The notes under the pieces were generated by a model, which was not told where the DNA came from, made no database searches, and saw only the letters and a program-made list of their open reading frames with translations. Shown here in pieces: positions 1-10,599 of a DNA stretch of 64,000 bases; positions within the stretch are counted from its first letter, which is position 1; each line of letters starts with the position of its first letter. The position numbers and the translations under genes were made by a program. Where the stretch lies: IMG/VR virus record IMGVR_UViG_3300006931_000029, positions 62,001 through 126,000 of that record. The stretch is one strand, 5' to 3'.

Positions 1-23
1 TGAAGATTGGTTGGTTGAAAATT

Positions 24-49
24 TGGTGCGAGCTGATTTATCTACTCGC
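24..49 (-). ncRNA. possible 26-nt minihelix RNA ending in ACCA
   Basis: Minus strand reads GCGAG-TAGATAAATCAG-CTCGC-A-CCA: a 5-bp stem plus discriminator and CCA. The A/T-rich context after CCA resembles that of the four larger RNAs upstream. It is short enough to be chance. Confidence 0.3.
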
Positions 50-123
50 GTCGTGTGAAACTGGAAGAACTTAGACTCTTAGGACCAAGATTTGGTCCAG
101 GCTGACAAGGTTAATTTGGAAAT

Positions 124-209
124 TGGTGGCGAAAGAAGGGATCGAACCTCCGACCTGGTCGTCCATTTTTAAGGTGGCCGTCCATGCTCTACCGCTAAGC
201 TATTTCGCC
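124..209 (-). tRNA. atypical 86-nt tRNA with an anticodon stem extended by about 6 bp (apical loop CU-UAA-AA)
   Basis: Acceptor GGCGAAA/TTTCGCC-A-CCA, D arm GCTT-AGCGGTA-GAGC, T arm GGAGG-TTCGATC-CCTTC and a 4-nt variable region are normal. The anticodon arm is 29 nt rather than 17 nt. Confidence 0.75.
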
Positions 210-212
210 GAC

Positions 213-282
213 TTTCAAGAGAACACCGAGGAAACAGGAACAATCCAGATTACTACGGCCAAAACCTGGCGTTCTCTTGAAA
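213..282. repeat. perfect 12-bp inverted repeat closing a stem-loop that fills the spacer between two tRNA-like RNAs
   Basis: TTTCAAGAGAAC at 213-224 and GTTCTCTTGAAA at 271-282 enclose 46 nt. Confidence 0.65.
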
Positions 283-283
283 T

Positions 284-357
284 TGGAGCCGACCGGGGAT
301 TAAGAAACACCCCTCTTCCGTCCCATGGGACGGCGTGCGCGGTTACACTATGACGGC
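284..357 (-). tRNA. degenerate 74-nt tRNA-like RNA; CAT lies inside a self-complementary arm with no 7-nt loop
   Basis: Cloverleaf order and CCA end are kept: GCCGTCA/GGTCGGC (5 of 7 pairs), D stem GTGT/GCAC, anticodon arm CCGTCCCATGGGACGG (a perfect 16-nt palindrome), and T arm GGGG/CCCC with a non-canonical 11-nt loop. Confidence 0.55.
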
Positions 358-363
358 ATAAAG

Positions 364-469
364 TGGTGCCAAGGCCGACATCGCTGCCGGCGGCGAAACC
401 CTGCCCGCTGCATTAGTCGCGTCCGAAGACACGTCGAGAGCAGTGGCGTTTGATTCCACGGGGCTTGGC
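364..469 (-). ncRNA. 106-nt tRNA-like ncRNA with acceptor stem, ACCA end and four internal arms
   Basis: GCCAAG/CTTGGC-A-CCA closes the molecule. Arms: GTGG/CCAC; CGTGTC-TTCG-GACGCG (UUCG loop) inside TGC/GCA; GCGG/CCGC; CGGCA-GCGA-TGTCG (GNRA loop). There is no TTCG-type T loop at the canonical position. It lies 6 nt after the tmRNA 3' end. Confidence 0.6.
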
Positions 470-475
470 ATAAAT

Positions 476-830
476 TGGTGGAGATGGCGGGAGTTGAACC
501 CGCGTGCTAAAAGAGAACCGAATCTGAGTCTACGCGCGTGTCCTATTTTAATGTCCAGGCGGACCTATCTTTGGCTGAGTTTTTGAGTTCCGCCTCAGCC
601 GGCAGCGAAATCAGTAGCGTAGTTTTTACGCAGCACGATCTACCCCGCTCATCTTAATCGTGCCACGCGCAGCCTAATTAGGCCGCGAGACGGAGCTCGT
701 TGGAACGAGCGAACGCCTTGACAATGGTGTTGCCATTTGTGGTTTGCCAAGTCTTGTTATGGAGGTCGACCTAGCAGTCTCCAGCGCGCATCAGGTATCT
801 GTCTCCTAAAGTAGAATCCAGAACATCCCC
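476..830 (-). ncRNA. ssrA: tmRNA (355 nt); probable tag (A)GNTIVKAFARSNELRLAA encoded at 678..734
   Basis: 5' end GGGGATGTTCTGGATTC and 3' end CGCGGGTTCAACTCCCGCCATCTCCACCA give an acceptor stem with a G3-U70 pair. A pk1-like pairing GCTAGGTC/GACTTGGC is present, and the short ORF ends in LAA-stop. Confidence 0.95.
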
Positions 831-883
831 AGTGCTATGTCAAAAGAACTTATCGACGACCGAAGTCACCGACAACGTCGCAG

Positions 884-911
884 AGTTTACTGCTCAATGA
901 GTCAATGTAAA
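884..911 (-). promoter_or_regulatory. sigma70-like promoter for the ncRNA cluster
   Basis: Minus strand TTTACA-N16-TAAACT about 50 nt upstream of the tmRNA 5' end. Confidence 0.6.
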
Positions 912-927
912 CAAAAAAGATGCGTTC

Positions 928-1563
928 TCACGCATTTTGTTCAACTGGCCGAACGCCGTGAATTCCCTGCTTCAGGACATACCAGTAGAGTTTTCCTTCG
1001 AGTCGAATCTGGTTGGCGCGGCTCTTGTCGACGTAAATTTTGTCGCCGATCTTGATTTGGGCGAGCACCGGGTCTTCGCTCGATGGCAGAAGATTTCCGA
1101 TTTGCACGACCTCAAACTCTGGAGGTGGAATGGCCGAATCCGGCAGATAGAGACCGCCGATCATGTCGATCTTGATGTCACGAACGAGCACCCAGTCGCC
1201 GAGCACATGAAAATTTTCAAGCGTGATCTGCGGAGAATCCAGCTTCGCGAATGCGTCTCCTTGATGCATGATCATCACGGGCTGACGACGGTCACCTTCA
1301 CCGACAAAATGGGTCACGCCCATTTCGAACATCTTGTTGCATTGGTAGATGACGATGTCGCCGACCTTGACGGCAATTTCGACCGTGTCTCCGATGGACG
1401 CAACTCGGCCAAGCCGATGGACTTGGTTGGCATTGGAGGGCATCAGGATGATGCCAGTCGCTTCTTCCTGCACAGCGGTGAGAGCGACTCGGTGTTTGAC
1501 TGGACGCACGCAGCTTCTCAGGTCAATCTCTGCGGGTTTGAAAGGGACGACGTTGGAACTCAT
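928..1563 (-). CDS. groES: co-chaperonin with two tandem GroES/Cpn10 domains
   Basis: Two GroES-like repeats: RPVKHRVAL..TGIILMPSNA..GRVASIG..VKVGDIVIY and HVLGDWVLVR..IGGLYLPDSA..EVVQIG..IKIGDKIYV. Confidence 0.8.
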   Translation of the reverse strand: MSSNVVPFKPAEIDLRSCVRPVKHRVALTAVQEEATGIILMPSNANQVHRLGRVASIGDTVEIAVKVGDIVIYQCNKMFEMGVTHFVGEGDRRQPVMIMHQGDAFAKLDSPQITLENFHVLGDWVLVRDIKIDMIGGLYLPDSAIPPPEFEVVQIGNLLPSSEDPVLAQIKIGDKIYVDKSRANQIRLEGKLYWYVLKQGIHGVRPVEQNA

Positions 1564-1589
1564 TCTGAACCTGAGAACGTATTTACTAC

Positions 1590-1916
1590 ATGCCGCACAG
1601 TATCGTCAAGAAACTTCTTGGGGAAGCAAGTCAAGATGCGCGATTCGACGTCAACGCTCGAATCGAAATCTGGGTCACTATTTCGGACCTCGAGTACGAT
1701 CGGCGGATTCAGGCCCTTCAGCAAGACCCGCGTCCAGTGGAGGCTAAAATCGTTGACGCAAAGAAGATTGCCCTGCAGGTCGCTCACGACAAGGTCAATG
1801 AGAAATCTACGGGAGACTTTGACATCACAGCTGACATCAGCATGGAGTCGATGAATGTCAATCGGATCGATTGGGTCGCGCTGGTCAGTCCTCCTCCGCC
1901 TGAGGACGAGGGTTAA
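1590..1916 (+). CDS. hypothetical protein with IVKKLLGE leader (candidate head protein)
   Basis: 108-aa ORF preceded by TATTTAC 3 nt upstream. Its N-terminus matches other small ORFs in the window. Confidence 0.6.
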   Translation: MPHSIVKKLLGEASQDARFDVNARIEIWVTISDLEYDRRIQALQQDPRPVEAKIVDAKKIALQVAHDKVNEKSTGDFDITADISMESMNVNRIDWVALVSPPPPEDEG

Positions 1917-2950
1917 AGTCCGTCTAGCAATCGCTCCAGCGAGTTAATTGAGCTGAACGGCTTTCGCTGTTCGAACGTCTTTACGGCTGCTTTTGCGTCG
2001 TCGTTTGGATCGATACCTTTTGGCAAAGGAGGAGCGACGGTTACCTTGATGATGTTCGTCAGTTTCTTGCAGCTATCCCACGCCGAAGCGATAGCGTCTG
2101 GGTCGAACATCAAACAAAGCTCCTTGATTCCTCGAGCTGTGAGAATTTTGGCTTGTTGTTCCGGGCTAATTTTATGCTTGAAGATGGCGACCGGTACAAC
2201 CTCGTTCGTTCGCAGTTCGTTCTTCAGCGAATAGACGTTGAACATCGATTCGACTACGATTCCGACTTTCGCTTCCGGAGCCCTCAGTCGGTCGATGTCG
2301 TAGACCCAGTAGCGAGAACCTAGTGGGATTTCGTACTTCGTCGGAAACTGCTTCGTCGATGGTTTCTTGCCGGTTTCCGGGTCGGGTTTCGGGTCTCGAT
2401 ACGTCCGTCCTTGGTAGTAAACCACGCGGTCGTATTCCATCACTGGAAAGATGCAAAACGGTTCCCACCTTCCGTCTTCCATCGTGTATCCCGCGCCGGC
2501 ATCTTCGAACGTTTTGAGGTCGAGATTTTTCCGAATTGCCATCTTCTCGATCAGTCTAGCGTATCCGCTTCCTCGGCGTTCGGTTAGCGGTGTGAATCCC
2601 CGCGGAAGTTTGATGTCGTTCGTGACTGCGAGTACGCTTCGCCTAGTTGCGTAGACGGCGTCCAAATCCTTCATCGCGTCGTCAAGCGTGGTCGTATCGT
2701 AGAGAGCGATGTCGCTTAGGTCCGGATCGTGGCCGAGAGTTTTGATCCACGCCAGGAAATCTCCGCCAACGCCACACCGCCAGCAGTTAGTTTTGCCGGT
2801 TTTAAGGTTCACCGACCTGTTGCCGGACTGGTCACCGCATCTGGGTTGCTCGCAGAGCATCACCAGTTCGTCCTGGGACGAACGGGCTTTGACTACTTGA
2901 AACAGTCCCTCGGCGACTGTTTTGAGCTTGCTACCGACTAGTTTTGCCAC
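1913..2950 (-). CDS. DNA primase (Zn finger + TOPRIM; DnaG/gp61-like)
   Basis: N-terminal C..RC....CWRC zinc finger, plus IVVES and LMFDPDA TOPRIM-like motifs. Confidence 0.8.
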   Translation of the reverse strand: MAKLVGSKLKTVAEGLFQVVKARSSQDELVMLCEQPRCGDQSGNRSVNLKTGKTNCWRCGVGGDFLAWIKTLGHDPDLSDIALYDTTTLDDAMKDLDAVYATRRSVLAVTNDIKLPRGFTPLTERRGSGYARLIEKMAIRKNLDLKTFEDAGAGYTMEDGRWEPFCIFPVMEYDRVVYYQGRTYRDPKPDPETGKKPSTKQFPTKYEIPLGSRYWVYDIDRLRAPEAKVGIVVESMFNVYSLKNELRTNEVVPVAIFKHKISPEQQAKILTARGIKELCLMFDPDAIASAWDSCKKLTNIIKVTVAPPLPKGIDPNDDAKAAVKTFEQRKPFSSINSLERLLDGL

Positions 2951-8511: not shown

Positions 8512-10599
8512 TTAGGCAGGAAGGTTGCTCGTGCCCACGTTCGAGAGGGTTGCACCCGACTTTTCCACCGTCGCCGTGATGATGAAGACTTCGGCGACGT
8601 CGATCGGGATGATCGCGAGGTCGACGATGACTTGACGAGCGTTGCGGGTGTCCGGGGTGTTGTTGGTGTCATCCAGCTGGATGGCGTAACCTTCAACACC
8701 ACGCTCGGACTTGACTGCCTCCATGAAGTTGGTGTAGTCCAGCTTCAGTTGTTGGAAGAGCACGTCGTCGATCGGGTCGAAGGTGTAGCGGCGAGCGATA
8801 TTCGCGAAGCCCTTGAGGATGTAGTTCACGAGCACCACGTTGTGGATAGCCGTGAGCTTGCTCTCGGTACGTTGCAGCGTGCGATCGCCGTAGATTTCGA
8901 TGGAGTTGCCAAGCAGCAACACCGGATTCACCGAGTTGCCATTGCCATACATGGCATTCTTGACGTCCAAAGAAACGTACTTGTAGCGAACTTTCTGCGC
9001 CTCGGGAATGACGCCGCGGATGTCACCTGCGACAGCCTTCCATGGCTTGTCGAGGTCGAAAGTGCGGGCAGCGCAACGGAGATAACCGAGCGACGGTGGC
9101 ACGTATTTCTGAACGCCAGTGAACGTGTCGCTGATTTGGAACCAGTTCCAGAAGAGACACATCCGGTAGTTGTCGATGCGGCCGTTGGCGGAGTAGAGAC
9201 CCGTGCCATTGTGCCAGTCGATAGCGTCGCGAGCGTTGAGATTGTCAGGGATATTGCCCACGCCAATCGCGTTGACCTTGCCGGCGATGCGGGCAATTTC
9301 CTGGTAGACCGCAATCGAGGTGGAATCCGGAACAGCAATGAAATCAACGTCAACCTCATCCGAGTCGGACCGCTCGAACAGCTTCAAGCCGGTCGGCGTA
9401 TCGTCGTTCGGGTCGATGGTGCCGATGTAGTCCTGGTCGGTCACGTTCTCGCCATTGAATCCGCCAGAGAATTCCGCCAAGTTCGACGGCGTGCCAATCG
9501 TGAGATTCCACGGGTTGTACGTGTTGCCTGGAGGCTCCGATCCGAAGACGTGGAAGATCGAGATGTAGCTCGACTTGCCGTTGATGCGAGTCGTGTAGAA
9601 GTTGTCGCTCGCTGGGTCGTTCGAGAGATTGTCGATGCTTTCCACCAACACCGATCCCTGATAGACCAGGAATTTCTTGGTGTCCGGCGCAGAGCCAGGA
9701 GCAACTTGGAGGGTGATGCCCGTCGACTGGCCTTGGGTGTTGGCCCAAGTTCCCGCTGAGTTTGCGAAAACCTGCATCGCATCGGCAGTGGACTGAGCGG
9801 TGACCTTGTAAACAGTCGCACCCGTGTAGCTATCCTGCAGAGGGAGGGCTTGGTAACCGACGTCCGTCTGGTTGGAGGTGTAGAAGAGGATGTCGCCGTT
9901 GGCGCGAACCTCGGACACCTTGATTTCGCGAGTCGTCGAACGATTCGTCTGGGAAACTTTCAGCGTGTCGCCCACCGAGATGTTGGCGTACGTGCCGCTG
10001 ACATTGATCTTGAAAGCGTTTTTGTCGCCGACAACCGTGCCCAAGCCGGTAACGGCAGAGCCGTAGGTCGGAGCGCTGAGGAACGCTTCGGCTTCATTGG
10101 CCGCGTTGGCAGACTCGGACCGACCAACCGTTGCACCGTTGTAGGTGTCAGCAAGAGCGACAGCTTCGCTGCCGACCGACACGAGGGTAATCGTGGTACC
10201 AGCAATTGAGTCGATCTTGGCATTCGGCGTGGTGATCTTGCTCGGTTGACGAACGCGAAGGTAATCACCGGGCGAGAAGAGACTCGCGTTTGGCGTGATG
10301 AGCGAGTAGGTTCCGGTCGAGCCAGAGGCGTTGTTGGACGCCGTCGTGGCGTATTGCTGACCGACGCGAACCACTCGGCAACCATCGCTCGAGTTGGAAA
10401 TCATCGCAACTGCATCGCCCACGAAGCTGCCTTCTAGGGGCGCACCGAATTTGCGGACGAACTCGAAGATGGATGGGCAATTGGTGACCGTGTCGAACTC
10501 GCCACGTTGGGCAATGCCCACGAGACCAGCGCGGAAACGGCTTGTCGGCGTGGTGACTTGGCTGTTGTCGACGACCCTGGTGATGACTTGAGGAAACAT
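8512..10599 (-). CDS. tail sheath protein (gp18-like)
   Basis: FPQVITRVVDNS, GLVGIAQRG, FVRKFG, YVPPS, WKAVAG..RG, VNPV, IYGDRTLQ and CVII-like C-terminus with IIPIDVAEVFII. Confidence 0.92.
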   Translation of the reverse strand: MFPQVITRVVDNSQVTTPTSRFRAGLVGIAQRGEFDTVTNCPSIFEFVRKFGAPLEGSFVGDAVAMISNSSDGCRVVRVGQQYATTASNNASGSTGTYSLITPNASLFSPGDYLRVRQPSKITTPNAKIDSIAGTTITLVSVGSEAVALADTYNGATVGRSESANAANEAEAFLSAPTYGSAVTGLGTVVGDKNAFKINVSGTYANISVGDTLKVSQTNRSTTREIKVSEVRANGDILFYTSNQTDVGYQALPLQDSYTGATVYKVTAQSTADAMQVFANSAGTWANTQGQSTGITLQVAPGSAPDTKKFLVYQGSVLVESIDNLSNDPASDNFYTTRINGKSSYISIFHVFGSEPPGNTYNPWNLTIGTPSNLAEFSGGFNGENVTDQDYIGTIDPNDDTPTGLKLFERSDSDEVDVDFIAVPDSTSIAVYQEIARIAGKVNAIGVGNIPDNLNARDAIDWHNGTGLYSANGRIDNYRMCLFWNWFQISDTFTGVQKYVPPSLGYLRCAARTFDLDKPWKAVAGDIRGVIPEAQKVRYKYVSLDVKNAMYGNGNSVNPVLLLGNSIEIYGDRTLQRTESKLTAIHNVVLVNYILKGFANIARRYTFDPIDDVLFQQLKLDYTNFMEAVKSERGVEGYAIQLDDTNNTPDTRNARQVIVDLAIIPIDVAEVFIITATVEKSGATLSNVGTSNLPA

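What the first reader, a model, noticed from the sequence alone, without database searches (positions are those of the whole stretch)
24..830. tmRNA-led cluster of CCA-ending tRNA-like RNAs, none with a normal anticodon arm
Seen: one minus-strand unit from a promoter at 884-911 carries tmRNA (830-476), a 106-nt five-helix RNA (469-364), a 74-nt degenerate tRNA (357-284), an 86-nt tRNA with an over-long anticodon arm (209-124) and possibly a 26-nt minihelix (49-24). Each keeps an acceptor stem and an encoded CCA, but each has an abnormal or missing decoding arm. Established: host defences such as PrrC, RloC and PARIS cleave tRNAs, and phage tRNAs can counter them; CCA-ended acceptor stems are the substrates of RNase P, aminoacyl-tRNA synthetases and EF-Tu. 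Inference: selection has kept the acceptor end but not decoding, which suggests decoys for tRNA-targeting defences, amino-acid donors or ribosome-rescue/stalling effectors. The cluster may continue beyond the left edge.
Basis: partly seen in the sequence, partly recalled or inferred. Interest (0 to 1): 0.85.

Follow-up and report, generated by a model that had tools for sequence, protein, structure and literature searches.

The report
Phage operon of non-decoding tRNA mimics
An uncultured soil jumbo phage transcribes, right behind its own tmRNA, three conserved tRNA-shaped RNAs that keep the amino-acid-accepting CCA end but cannot read codons; they open an 8.8-kb island of tRNAs, Y-RNA-like modules and a Ro60 gene, and are kept by selection although their job is still unknown.

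Summary
The window's left end (minus strand) holds a bona fide tmRNA, then a 106-nt RNA, a 74-nt cloverleaf and an 86-nt tRNA. The 106-nt RNA has a 6-bp acceptor stem, a 7-bp GNRA-capped hairpin where the T arm should be, and a long irregular arm. In the 74-nt cloverleaf the anticodon arm is a closed hairpin. The 86-nt tRNA has a 10-bp rod with purine-purine mismatches as its anticodon arm. All end in NCCA plus a U-rich spacer, like every tRNA of this phage.

Four diverged phage lineages keep the 106-nt and 86-nt RNAs through many compensatory changes. The rod's loop is 9, 7, 5 or 5 nt, so it is not an anticodon loop. The 74-nt RNA exists in two lineages. The "minihelix" CCA is not conserved.

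The cluster runs past the window edge. The operon ends at a terminator about 220 nt beyond it. About 34 normal tRNAs follow, then about a dozen further odd CCA-ending RNAs, eight Y-RNA-like modules and a Ro60/TROVE gene.

Best reading: matured, non-decoding tRNA mimics that act by binding proteins that read the acceptor/elbow half of tRNA, as decoys or adaptors. The function is inferred, not shown. They are new families of a known kind.

The parts
920..935 (-). Intrinsic terminator of the upstream GroES-like gene (928-1563, minus strand)
   Evidence: Terminator-like hairpin plus T-run at L140 1113-1128, which is window 935-920. The GroES-like assignment comes from PHROG and Pfam Cpn10.
884..911 (-). 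Sigma-70-like promoter of the tmRNA operon (TTTACA, 16 nt, TAAACT)
   Evidence: scores 9 of 12 matches, which is no better than chance on its own. The block TTTTTGTTTACA..TAAACT/TACACT recurs before the tmRNA in L123 and L124. It also recurs before the TROVE gene in L140, L123, L124 and L141.
850..875 (-). Hairpin in the tmRNA 5' leader (UUCG loop)
   Evidence: L140 1173-1198. Relatives carry a leader hairpin of different sequence at the same place.
476..830 (-). tmRNA with G3:U70, an 18-codon tag reading frame and an encoded CCA
   Evidence: ARAGORN. Rfam RF00023, 95 bits against a threshold of 47. Present in all relatives.
364..469 (-). 106-nt tRNA-like RNA: 6-bp acceptor stem with A73-CCA, a 7-bp hairpin capped by a GNRA tetraloop in the T-arm position, and a roughly 25-bp irregular arm with a conserved internal loop
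   Evidence: MFE fold. The same three-way architecture appears in four lineages; L124 adopts it within 0.4 kcal/mol of its MFE. Covariation is shown. GNRA loops are GCGA/GUAA/GAAA/GAAA. No Rfam family matches even at E<=10.
284..357 (-). 74-nt cloverleaf with U73-CCA, non-canonical D and T loops, and the anticodon arm replaced by a closed hairpin (6 bp + CAUG)
   Evidence: The ortholog in L123 (11234-11308) has identical D/T regions. Its acceptor stem differs but is fully paired, and its hairpin differs but still pairs (CUCCC-UUAGGU-GGGAG). Absent from L124 and L125.
210..283 (-). Long hairpin spacer: a conserved 12-bp basal stem with a hypervariable interior
   Evidence: MFE z-score -4.6. The stem is conserved in L123 and L124 while the interior is unrelated and 50-70 nt long. 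A role as a processing (RNase III-type) site is inference only.
124..209 (-). 86-nt tRNA-like RNA: canonical acceptor, D and T arms and encoded CCA, but a 10-bp rod with conserved A.A and G.A mismatches and a variable loop in place of the anticodon arm
   Evidence: Rfam tRNA, 48.2 bits. Explicit pair lists for four lineages are and covariation. ARAGORN gives inconsistent isotypes for the orthologs: Phe-AAA and Ala-UGC.
82..100 (-). Highly conserved hairpin (GGACCAA/UUGGUCC) followed by AGAGUCUAAGUU, in the leader downstream of the 86-nt RNA
   Evidence: Invariant in four lineages. A probe made from it found only this phage clade in three public collections.
24..49 (-).
   Evidence: The CCA is not conserved. 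The region continues into a conserved 47-51-codon ORF or structured RNA, then a terminator, both beyond window position 1.

Best explanation
The segment is the first operon of the RNA island of an uncultured T4-like jumbo myophage. A host-type promoter drives tmRNA, the 106-nt RNA, the 74-nt RNA in some lineages, a hairpin, the 86-nt RNA, a conserved leader with a short ORF-like block, and a terminator.

The three tRNA-shaped RNAs are functional, non-decoding tRNA mimics. Each keeps the 'top half' of a tRNA: the acceptor helix, NCCA, and either an elbow or an elbow substitute. Each is spaced like the phage's real tRNAs. They are therefore most likely cut out by RNase P and the 3'-trimming enzymes into stable RNAs (inferred).

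In each, the decoding arm is replaced by a closed hairpin, a mismatch-containing rod or a long irregular arm. They cannot pair with codons.

I propose that they work stoichiometrically. They would bind proteins that recognise the acceptor/CCA end or the elbow of tRNA, while the replacement arm either carries a second binding site (adaptor) or simply keeps the RNA out of translation (decoy or sponge). On this reading they form a translation-protection module together with the tmRNA, the tRNA supply and the Ro60/Y-RNA system of the same island.

Shown: existence, conservation, structure and loss of an anticodon loop. Inferred: processing, stability and the binding mode. No partner protein has been identified.
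For: - Structure is kept across four lineages that are only 59-83% identical in these RNAs. The 86-nt RNA has 89% paired cells and 10 pairs changed on both sides. The 106-nt RNA has 94.7% and 6.
- The long arm of the 106-nt RNA has different sequence but the same architecture in every lineage.
- The rod is always 10-11 bp with purine-purine mismatches at matching places. Its loop is 9/7/5/5 nt.
- GNRA caps are conserved in the 106-nt RNA.
- NCCA plus a U-rich spacer follows every one of these RNAs and all but one of the 36 ARAGORN-called genes of the island.
- Operon order is conserved in four lineages.
- The same island holds further anticodon-less tRNA bodies. One family has its anticodon loop replaced by a 6-nt loop, GUAA or UUCG in three lineages. 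Others carry a Y-RNA-like module at that position.
- A Ro60/TROVE+vWA gene closes the island.
- Precedent: bacterial and phage Y RNAs contain tRNA-like domains. One of them is cleaved by RNase P and receives CCA (PMC4201824).
Against: - No binding partner is identified.
- No RNA-specific enzyme turned up among the 29 window ORFs and 11 ORFs from beyond the window edge (10 past the far end of the island, one inside the operon) that were tested.
- Only four lineages are available, and effectively two for the 74-nt RNA, so covariation statistics are thin.
- Folding energy alone is unremarkable for the 74-nt and 86-nt RNAs (z-scores -0.8 and -0.6).
- There are no expression data, because the phage is uncultured. 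Mature ends and stability are inferred from spacing only.
- The window's 74-nt copy has a weakened acceptor stem.
Confidence: 0.45

Rival explanations
1. Cis-acting processing punctuation. The tRNA-like folds exist mainly as RNase P / 3'-end processing signals that free the tmRNA 3' end and the downstream leader/ORF from one transcript, and the excised pieces have no function of their own.
For: - The 106-nt RNA starts 6 nt after the tmRNA CCA, and all units are separated by 4-7 nt U-rich spacers.
- The same spacing is used throughout the tRNA array.
- A conserved hairpin spacer sits between units.
- From general knowledge: RNase P separates polycistronic tRNA transcripts, and mascRNA-type tRNA-like elements act in this way.
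Against: - One tRNA-like unit would be enough, yet two or three are kept in tandem.
- The parts that do not matter for RNase P are also kept by compensatory change and conserved mismatches: the 25-bp arm of the 106-nt RNA and the 10-bp rod with its mismatches.
Confidence: 0.2
2. They are the phage's Y RNAs proper, that is, direct partners of the Ro60/TROVE protein. The rod or the long arm would be the Ro60-binding stem and the tRNA-like part would correspond to the YrlA tRNA-like domain, in a permuted topology.
For: - The Ro60/TROVE+vWA gene is on the same strand at the far end of the same RNA island in every lineage where that end is visible.
- YrlA Y RNAs combine D/T arms with a long stem at the anticodon position (PMC4201824).
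- The 3' strand of the rod carries GACGA(C/G) in two lineages and GACG in all four. This resembles the GNCGAA motif and lies on the topologically equivalent strand.
Against: - The island already contains eight copies of a different module (CAGUGA / UUACUUC / UUUUCUC). That module matches the architecture of the RNAs directly upstream of the TROVE genes in Caulobacter phage CcrColossus and Rhizobium phage RHph_TM3_3_6.
- None of the window RNAs carries that module, and the window has no match to it.
- The resemblance in the rod is 4-5 nt and could be chance.
- The window RNAs lie about 8 kb from the TROVE gene.
Confidence: 0.12
3. They are aminoacylated carriers or ribosome-rescue helpers. Charged on their CCA ends by synthetases that ignore the anticodon, they would deliver amino acids to a non-ribosomal acceptor or assist the co-transcribed tmRNA.
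For: - The intact NCCA is conserved, as are the first three acceptor pairs and A73 of the 106-nt RNA (G1-C72, C2-G71, C3-G70, as in the phage's tRNA-Leu genes).
- They are co-transcribed with tmRNA in all lineages.
Against: - None has G3:U70.
- The discriminator of the 86-nt RNA varies (A/G/A/A).
- The 106-nt RNA lacks D and T loops.
- No transferase, synthetase or SmpB gene was found among the tested ORFs, although only about a third of the genome was seen.
Confidence: 0.1
4. They are decaying tRNA pseudogenes carried along in a large tRNA array.
For: - The window's 74-nt copy has U.U and A.G mismatches in its acceptor stem, and the RNA is missing from two lineages.
- Folding z-scores for the 74-nt and 86-nt RNAs are not significant.
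Against: - Compensatory changes, conserved CCA, conserved arm length, conserved mismatch positions and conserved GNRA caps persist across lineages with 17-41% sequence divergence.
- Intervening spacers diverge much faster, down to 40-67% identity.
Confidence: 0.05

Closest known systems
YrlA-type Y RNAs of bacteria and phages (partners of Ro60/Rsr)
   Same: Both are non-decoding RNAs with tRNA-like D/T arms and an acceptor-like stem. In both, a long protein-binding stem replaces the anticodon arm. M. smegmatis YrlA is cut by RNase P and receives CCA (PMC4201824). Both are encoded with a Ro60 gene, and phage examples are known (PMC12135203).
   Different: The window RNAs have their ends at the acceptor stem with an encoded CCA. 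They lack the T / acceptor-hairpin / D order. They also lack the conserved module (5' motif, YUAY) that this phage's own Y-like modules carry. They sit about 8 kb from the Ro60 gene, in the tmRNA operon.
tRNA (Rfam RF00005)
   Same: The 86-nt RNA has a 7-bp acceptor stem, a D arm with GG, a T arm with GGUUCGA, a 4-nt variable loop and an encoded CCA. It scores 48 bits.
   Different: Its anticodon arm is a 10-11-bp rod with purine-purine mismatches and a loop of 5-9 nt that is not conserved. The 74-nt and 106-nt RNAs do not score at all.
tRNA-like domain of tmRNA
   Same: Both have an acceptor stem with CCA joined to a long helix that replaces the anticodon arm, and neither has an anticodon. 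The 106-nt RNA is encoded next to a tmRNA.
   Different: The 106-nt RNA has no G3:U70, no T loop (a GNRA tetraloop instead), no pseudoknots and no reading frame.
Stable RNAs 'species 1 and 2' (rnaC, rnaD) of the phage T4 tRNA cluster
   Same: Both are small stable RNAs of unknown function, co-transcribed and processed with phage tRNAs.
Engineered tRNA scaffolds and natural tRNA-like 3'-end elements such as mascRNA (own knowledge)
   Same: A tRNA body is used for processing and stability while the anticodon region carries unrelated structure or is closed off.
   Different: Those are either eukaryotic cis-elements or laboratory constructs. The RNAs here are conserved phage genes.

Membership tests
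tmRNA (RF00023), for 830-476 | tRNA-like domain with G3:U70 and CCA, a tag reading frame ending in a stop codon, and pseudoknot-rich body | tested here: met
   ARAGORN finds the tag peptide. The Rfam alignment covers the full length at 95 bits against a threshold of 47.
tRNA (RF00005), for 209-124 | Cloverleaf with a 7-bp acceptor stem, D arm, T arm with the GTTCRA loop, and 3' CCA context | tested here: met
   48.2 bits against a threshold of 29.
tRNA (RF00005), for 209-124 | 5-bp anticodon stem with a 7-nt loop (U33, anticodon, purine 37) conserved among orthologs | tested here: not met
   The stem is a 10-11-bp rod with mismatches. The loop is CCUUAAAAA / CCAAAAA / GACGA / UUAAA in the four lineages. 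ARAGORN does not call the window copy.
tRNA (RF00005), for 469-364 and 357-284 | Detectable match to the tRNA covariance model | tested here: not met
   No tRNA hit at E<=10 on window 1-1000.
Y RNA / YrlA | Encoded near a Ro60/TROVE gene on the same strand | tested here: inconclusive
   The TROVE+vWA gene is on the same strand but about 8 kb away, across the RNA island. YrlA is usually within 4 kb (PMC4201824).
Y RNA / YrlA | 5' motif (GNCGAAN0-1G or its local variant) followed by YUAY, with the stem closed by the 5' and 3' ends | tested here: not met
   The window has no match to the phage's own module. The rod carries only GACG(A). The ends of these RNAs are at the acceptor stem.
Y RNA / YrlA | Binding to Ro60 | not testable with these tools
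   This needs EMSA or co-purification.
tRNA pseudogene | Unconstrained decay: loss of pairing and of CCA among orthologs | tested here: not met
   Only the window's 74-nt copy shows two acceptor-stem mismatches.
Known Rfam RNA families other than tRNA and tmRNA | Score above the gathering threshold, or any suggestive E-value | tested here: not met

The most novel reading that the evidence does not exclude
This phage clade uses the tRNA body as a natural chassis. A whole set of CCA-ended, anticodon-less RNAs is matured by the host tRNA machinery and serves as stoichiometric decoys or adaptors. The set comprises the three in the window plus about a dozen more in the island, including tRNA bodies that carry Y-RNA modules.

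One possible role is to soak up defence toxins that attack the tRNA acceptor/CCA end, such as CapRel/toxSAS-type pyrophosphokinases or MenT/AbiE-type nucleotidyltransferases (own knowledge). Another is to tether host nucleases to the phage Ro60 particle. Either way this would be an RNA-based counter-defence layer not yet described.
Probability: 0.2. Interest if true: 0.85.

Novelty: new variant of a known kind. Interest (0 to 1): 0.6.

Why it matters
Phage tRNA arrays are usually read as codon-supply or as replacements for cleaved host tRNAs. Here a conserved part of such an array cannot decode at all, yet selection keeps it. It sits in one operon with a tmRNA and in one island with Ro60 and multiple Y-RNA-like modules.

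That gives three (and with the rest of the island, about fifteen) compact, well-defined RNAs with which to ask what tRNA mimicry is for in phage infection. The candidate answers are sponging of tRNA-directed toxins, recruitment of host RNA enzymes, and RNA quality control. The RNAs are short enough for direct pull-down, charging and protection assays in surrogate hosts.

It also shows that standard tRNA finders miss or mislabel this class. ARAGORN called the orthologs Phe-AAA, Ala-UGC or nothing.

Tried and rejected
1. Rfam at a permissive threshold on the region gave only tmRNA and one tRNA. The weak 'permuted tmRNA' and plastid-UTR hits are tRNA-like noise.

2. Reading the extra 12 nt of the 86-nt RNA as an intron was rejected. 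No excision gives a 7-nt loop with U33 in all lineages, and there is no bulge-helix-bulge motif (sequence inspection).

3. Reading the repeated CAGUGA/UUACUUC element beyond the edge as a new tRNA intron, a permuted intron-exon or a ribozyme was rejected. Excision would leave 17-20-nt loops. The same architecture lies upstream of the TROVE genes in two cultured phages, one of which has published Y-like RNAs.

4. The first collection scan for that element, with 14 specified bases, returned only chance hits (by analogy). A 17-base scan for the leader hairpin gave seven chance loci without tRNAs.

5. Looking for more relatives gave little. IMG/VR holds only this contig plus one partial relative. 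The metagenome scan found near-identical copies only. The genome collection had nothing. GenBank phages had no DNA match and the capsid protein reaches at most 31% identity.

6. The best GenBank homolog of the TROVE protein, in the 635-kb phage LR745206, has no tRNAs or Rfam hits nearby, so TROVE-tRNA linkage is not universal.

7. No parent isoacceptor could be assigned to the 86-nt or 74-nt RNAs by body similarity.

8. The conserved block after the leader reads as a 47-51-codon ORF with in-frame indels, but it has no Shine-Dalgarno sequence, no third-position bias and no Pfam hit. It is left undecided.

9. The hairpin at 283-210 only superficially resembles the Y-like module. Relatives have unrelated interiors.
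Full report
**Where the window comes from.** The window is positions 62001-126000 of IMG/VR contig IMGVR_UViG_3300006931_000029 (224,954 bp). One search gives the mapping, and one search confirms that L140 1-2047 is the exact reverse complement of window 1-2047.

It is a T4-like jumbo myophage. Searches identify the following genes:
- tail sheath, DNA polymerase and primase;
- Gp23-type capsid protein and prohead protease;
- T4-type portal and gp25;
- NAD-dependent DNA ligase, a RecA-like protein and a DnaB-like protein.

There is no close cultured relative. GenBank phages give no DNA match, and the capsid protein reaches at most 31% identity.

**Check of the observation.**
- ARAGORN and Rfam agree on a complete tmRNA at 830-476(-).
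- Rfam finds a tRNA at 209-127(-) with 23 nt where the model expects 11. ARAGORN does not call it.
- Nothing else in window 1-1000 matches any Rfam family, even at E<=10.
- The 106-nt stretch (469-364) folds into a 6-bp acceptor stem, a long irregular arm and a 7-bp hairpin with a GCGA loop, followed by ACCA.
- The 74-nt stretch (357-284) folds into a cloverleaf whose anticodon-position arm is a 6-bp stem closed by CAUG.
- Each unit ends in NCCA followed by AUUU or CUUU. Thirty-five of the 36 ARAGORN-called genes of the island have the same ending, which links these RNAs to the same maturation route (inference).
- The promoter-like site at 911-884 is found. It is no better than chance by itself but is conserved in relatives.

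**Relatives.** The GroES-like protein just upstream (928-1563) has five relatives at 98-59% identity. Their contigs give three further lineages with the same layout:
- L123 (90% protein identity);
- L124 (88%);
- L125/L126 (65%).

L134 and L138 are near-identical to the window. At the DNA level the RNAs are 59-83% identical between the window and these lineages. The spacer between the 106-nt and 86-nt RNAs is only 40-67% identical.

**The 106-nt RNA is conserved and structured.**
- All four lineages keep the 6-bp acceptor stem (A-U to G-C at pair 4).
- All four keep A73-CCA.
- All four keep the 7-bp hairpin with GNRA loops GCGA, GUAA, GAAA and GAAA.
- On the three helices that align unambiguously, 94.7% of cells pair against 22-43% when partners are slid. 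Six pairs change on both sides.
- The long arm has largely different sequence in the window and in the others, yet it folds into the same series: basal helix, internal loop (CAAC/AAGY; AAAC/AG in the window), 5-bp helix, and a terminal variable hairpin. L124 reaches this fold within 0.4 kcal/mol of its MFE.

**The 86-nt RNA is a tRNA body with a rod.** Explicit pair lists show canonical acceptor, D and T arms in all four lineages. The anticodon arm is a 10-11-bp helix with non-canonical pairs at corresponding places:
- A.A and G.A in the window and L123;
- U.U plus tandem G.A/A.G in L124;
- A.A, A.A and A.C in L125.

Pairs 2-3 of the rod switch from GC GC to CG CG between the window and L123. 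The loop is 9, 7, 5 and 5 nt and is not conserved, and the discriminator is A/G/A/A. Overall 89% of cells pair against 43-49% in slid controls, with 10 pairs changed on both sides. ARAGORN labels the orthologs Phe-AAA and Ala-UGC, which illustrates that there is no conserved anticodon. An RNA with an arm twice the normal length and a variable loop cannot decode (inference from tRNA geometry).

**The 74-nt RNA is younger and possibly less constrained.** It exists in the window clade and in L123 only. The D and T regions are identical in both. The L123 acceptor stem is fully paired, whereas the window's has U.U and A.G mismatches. The closed hairpin differs in sequence but pairs in both, and its loop is CAUG in one and UUAGGU in the other. 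Similar U73, tetraloop-capped tRNA-like RNAs occur elsewhere in the island in all lineages.

**The 'minihelix' is not supported.** In L123 and L124 the hairpin is kept but the CCA is not. The region belongs to a conserved leader. That leader contains an invariant hairpin (window 100-82) and runs into a very conserved block of about 190 nt beyond the window edge. The block reads as a 47-51-codon ORF with in-frame indels. It has no ribosome-binding site, no third-position bias and no Pfam match. A conserved GC-rich hairpin with a U-run ends the unit about 220 nt beyond window position 1.

**The cluster continues, with normal tRNAs.** L140 and L001 extend the sequence past the window. After the terminator and a conserved, structured region of about 230 nt comes an array of about 34 canonical tRNAs, all with encoded CCA. 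About a dozen further CCA-ended RNAs are interspersed that no tool calls as tRNAs. One family has its anticodon loop replaced by a 6-nt loop, GUAA or UUCG in three lineages.

The island is about 8.8 kb. It ends at a TROVE+vWA (Ro60) gene on the same strand, followed by an HNH gene.

**The repeated module in the island.** A module occurs eight times in each of three lineages: P1, CAGUGA, P2b, UUACUUC ... P2a, GAC, UUUUCUC, P1'. It does not occur in the window. Its 7-bp helix P2 shows many pair types over 19 copies. It is found in four settings:
- alone between tRNAs;
- around a tRNA-like domain in T / acceptor-hairpin / D order, with CCA in the closing loop;
- around an un-permuted tRNA-like domain;
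- in place of the anticodon loop of CCA-ended tRNA bodies, where excision would leave 17-20-nt loops, so it is not an intron.

The same architecture lies directly upstream of the TROVE genes of Caulobacter phage CcrColossus and Rhizobium phage RHph_TM3_3_6. CcrColossus is one of the phages reported to carry Y RNA-like RNAs (PMC12135203, citing PMC4201824). YrlA Y RNAs are defined by a 5' motif, YUAY, and then T arm, acceptor-like hairpin and D arm. I therefore read the module as this clade's Y-RNA module. Rfam has no model that detects it.

**What the window RNAs most likely are.** They are not decaying pseudogenes, because structure, CCA, arm length and mismatch positions are all kept. They are not decoding tRNAs. 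They are not the phage's Y RNAs in the strict sense, since they lack the module.

They share with Y RNAs, and with the other odd RNAs of the island, the design 'tRNA top half plus something else where the anticodon should be'. The most economical mechanism is that they are matured like tRNAs and act by binding proteins that read the acceptor/CCA end or the elbow. The rod or long arm would then be either a second binding site or a way of keeping the RNA out of translation.

Three points make a translation-protection role plausible:
- co-transcription with tmRNA from a host-type promoter;
- the neighbouring tRNA supply;
- the Ro60/Y system, which in bacteria belongs to an RNA-repair operon induced by damaged tRNAs (PMC7790460, seen).

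This part is inference. Decoys for enzymes that attack the acceptor end would fit.

**Rivals.** The alternatives, and the experiments that separate them, are given in the rival and next-step fields:
- pure processing punctuation;
- true Ro60 partners;
- aminoacyl carriers;
- relics.

**Novelty and score.** Non-decoding tRNA mimics are known: Y RNAs, the tmRNA tRNA-like domain and the T4 stable RNAs. These three families are in no library. They are conserved in a new phage clade and form a tmRNA-led operon inside an unusually rich RNA island. I rate this as a new variant of a known kind, with interest about 0.6.

Noticed in passing
Beyond the window's left edge: L140 2735-4340 (also L123 12200-15100 and L124 10436-13600): Eight copies per genome of a structured module (CAGUGA / UUACUUC / UUUUCUC with helices P1 and P2). 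P2 covaries over 19 copies. The module appears stand-alone, around permuted or normal tRNA-like domains, and in place of the anticodon loop of CCA-ended tRNA bodies. Its architecture matches the RNAs upstream of the TROVE genes in Caulobacter phage CcrColossus and Rhizobium phage RHph_TM3_3_6, so it is probably this clade's Y-RNA (YrlA-like) module. Rfam does not detect it. Variants occur in unrelated IMG/VR contigs (L144-L146).
   Followed up: partly
L140 10001-11482 (contig 54047-52566), outside the window: A Ro60-like TROVE+vWA protein gene closes the 8.8-kb RNA island on the same strand, followed by an HNH endonuclease gene. The arrangement is the same in L123, L124 and L141.
   Followed up: yes
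L140 2054-2200, starting 6 nt beyond window position 1: A very conserved block of about 190 nt reads as a 47-51-codon ORF with in-frame indels in four lineages. It has no Shine-Dalgarno sequence, no third-position bias and no Pfam hit, and it also predicts conserved helices. Whether it is a small protein or a structured RNA is undecided.
   Followed up: partly
L140 2267-2498 (also L123 11832-12063 and L124 10037-10274): A conserved, highly structured region of about 230 nt lies between the operon terminator and the first tRNA of the main array. It has long-range helices, a few compensatory changes and no Rfam match. It could be a further ncRNA or a regulatory leader of the tRNA array.
   Followed up: partly
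L140 2499-2572; L123 12064-12130; L124 9605-9676: A tRNA-like family (ARAGORN 'tRNA-???') with G73-CCA. Its anticodon loop is a 6-nt loop, a GUAA tetraloop or a UUCG tetraloop in the three lineages, and the acceptor stem covaries. This is another anticodon-less tRNA body.
   Followed up: partly
L140 7886-8070 and 8619-8714 (with orthologs in L123, L124 and L141): Three conserved CCA-ended tRNA-like RNAs of about 90-95 nt. Two of them carry a Shine-Dalgarno-like AAGGAGGACA / GGAGUCCCAC segment in the D region and 9-nt loops such as CCUCGAAAA. Their function is unknown.
   Followed up: no
L123 17850-17927: A relative encodes a tRNA with anticodon CUA (an amber suppressor, which ARAGORN labels Pyl). 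No equivalent was seen in the window phage's array.
   Followed up: no
window 283-210: A hairpin whose 12-bp basal stem is conserved in three lineages while its 45-70-nt interior is completely different in each. It may be a processing site or a hot spot for insertions.
   Followed up: partly
window 911-884 and L140 about 9925-9960: The same promoter-like block (TTTTTGTTTACA, 16-17 nt, TAAACT-like) precedes both the tmRNA operon and the TROVE gene in all lineages. This suggests the two ends of the island are co-regulated.
   Followed up: no
L140 4414-4777, 5870-6117, 7042-7500 and 8072-8368: Several short ORF-like stretches are interspersed among the RNA genes of the island. None was analysed.
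   Followed up: no
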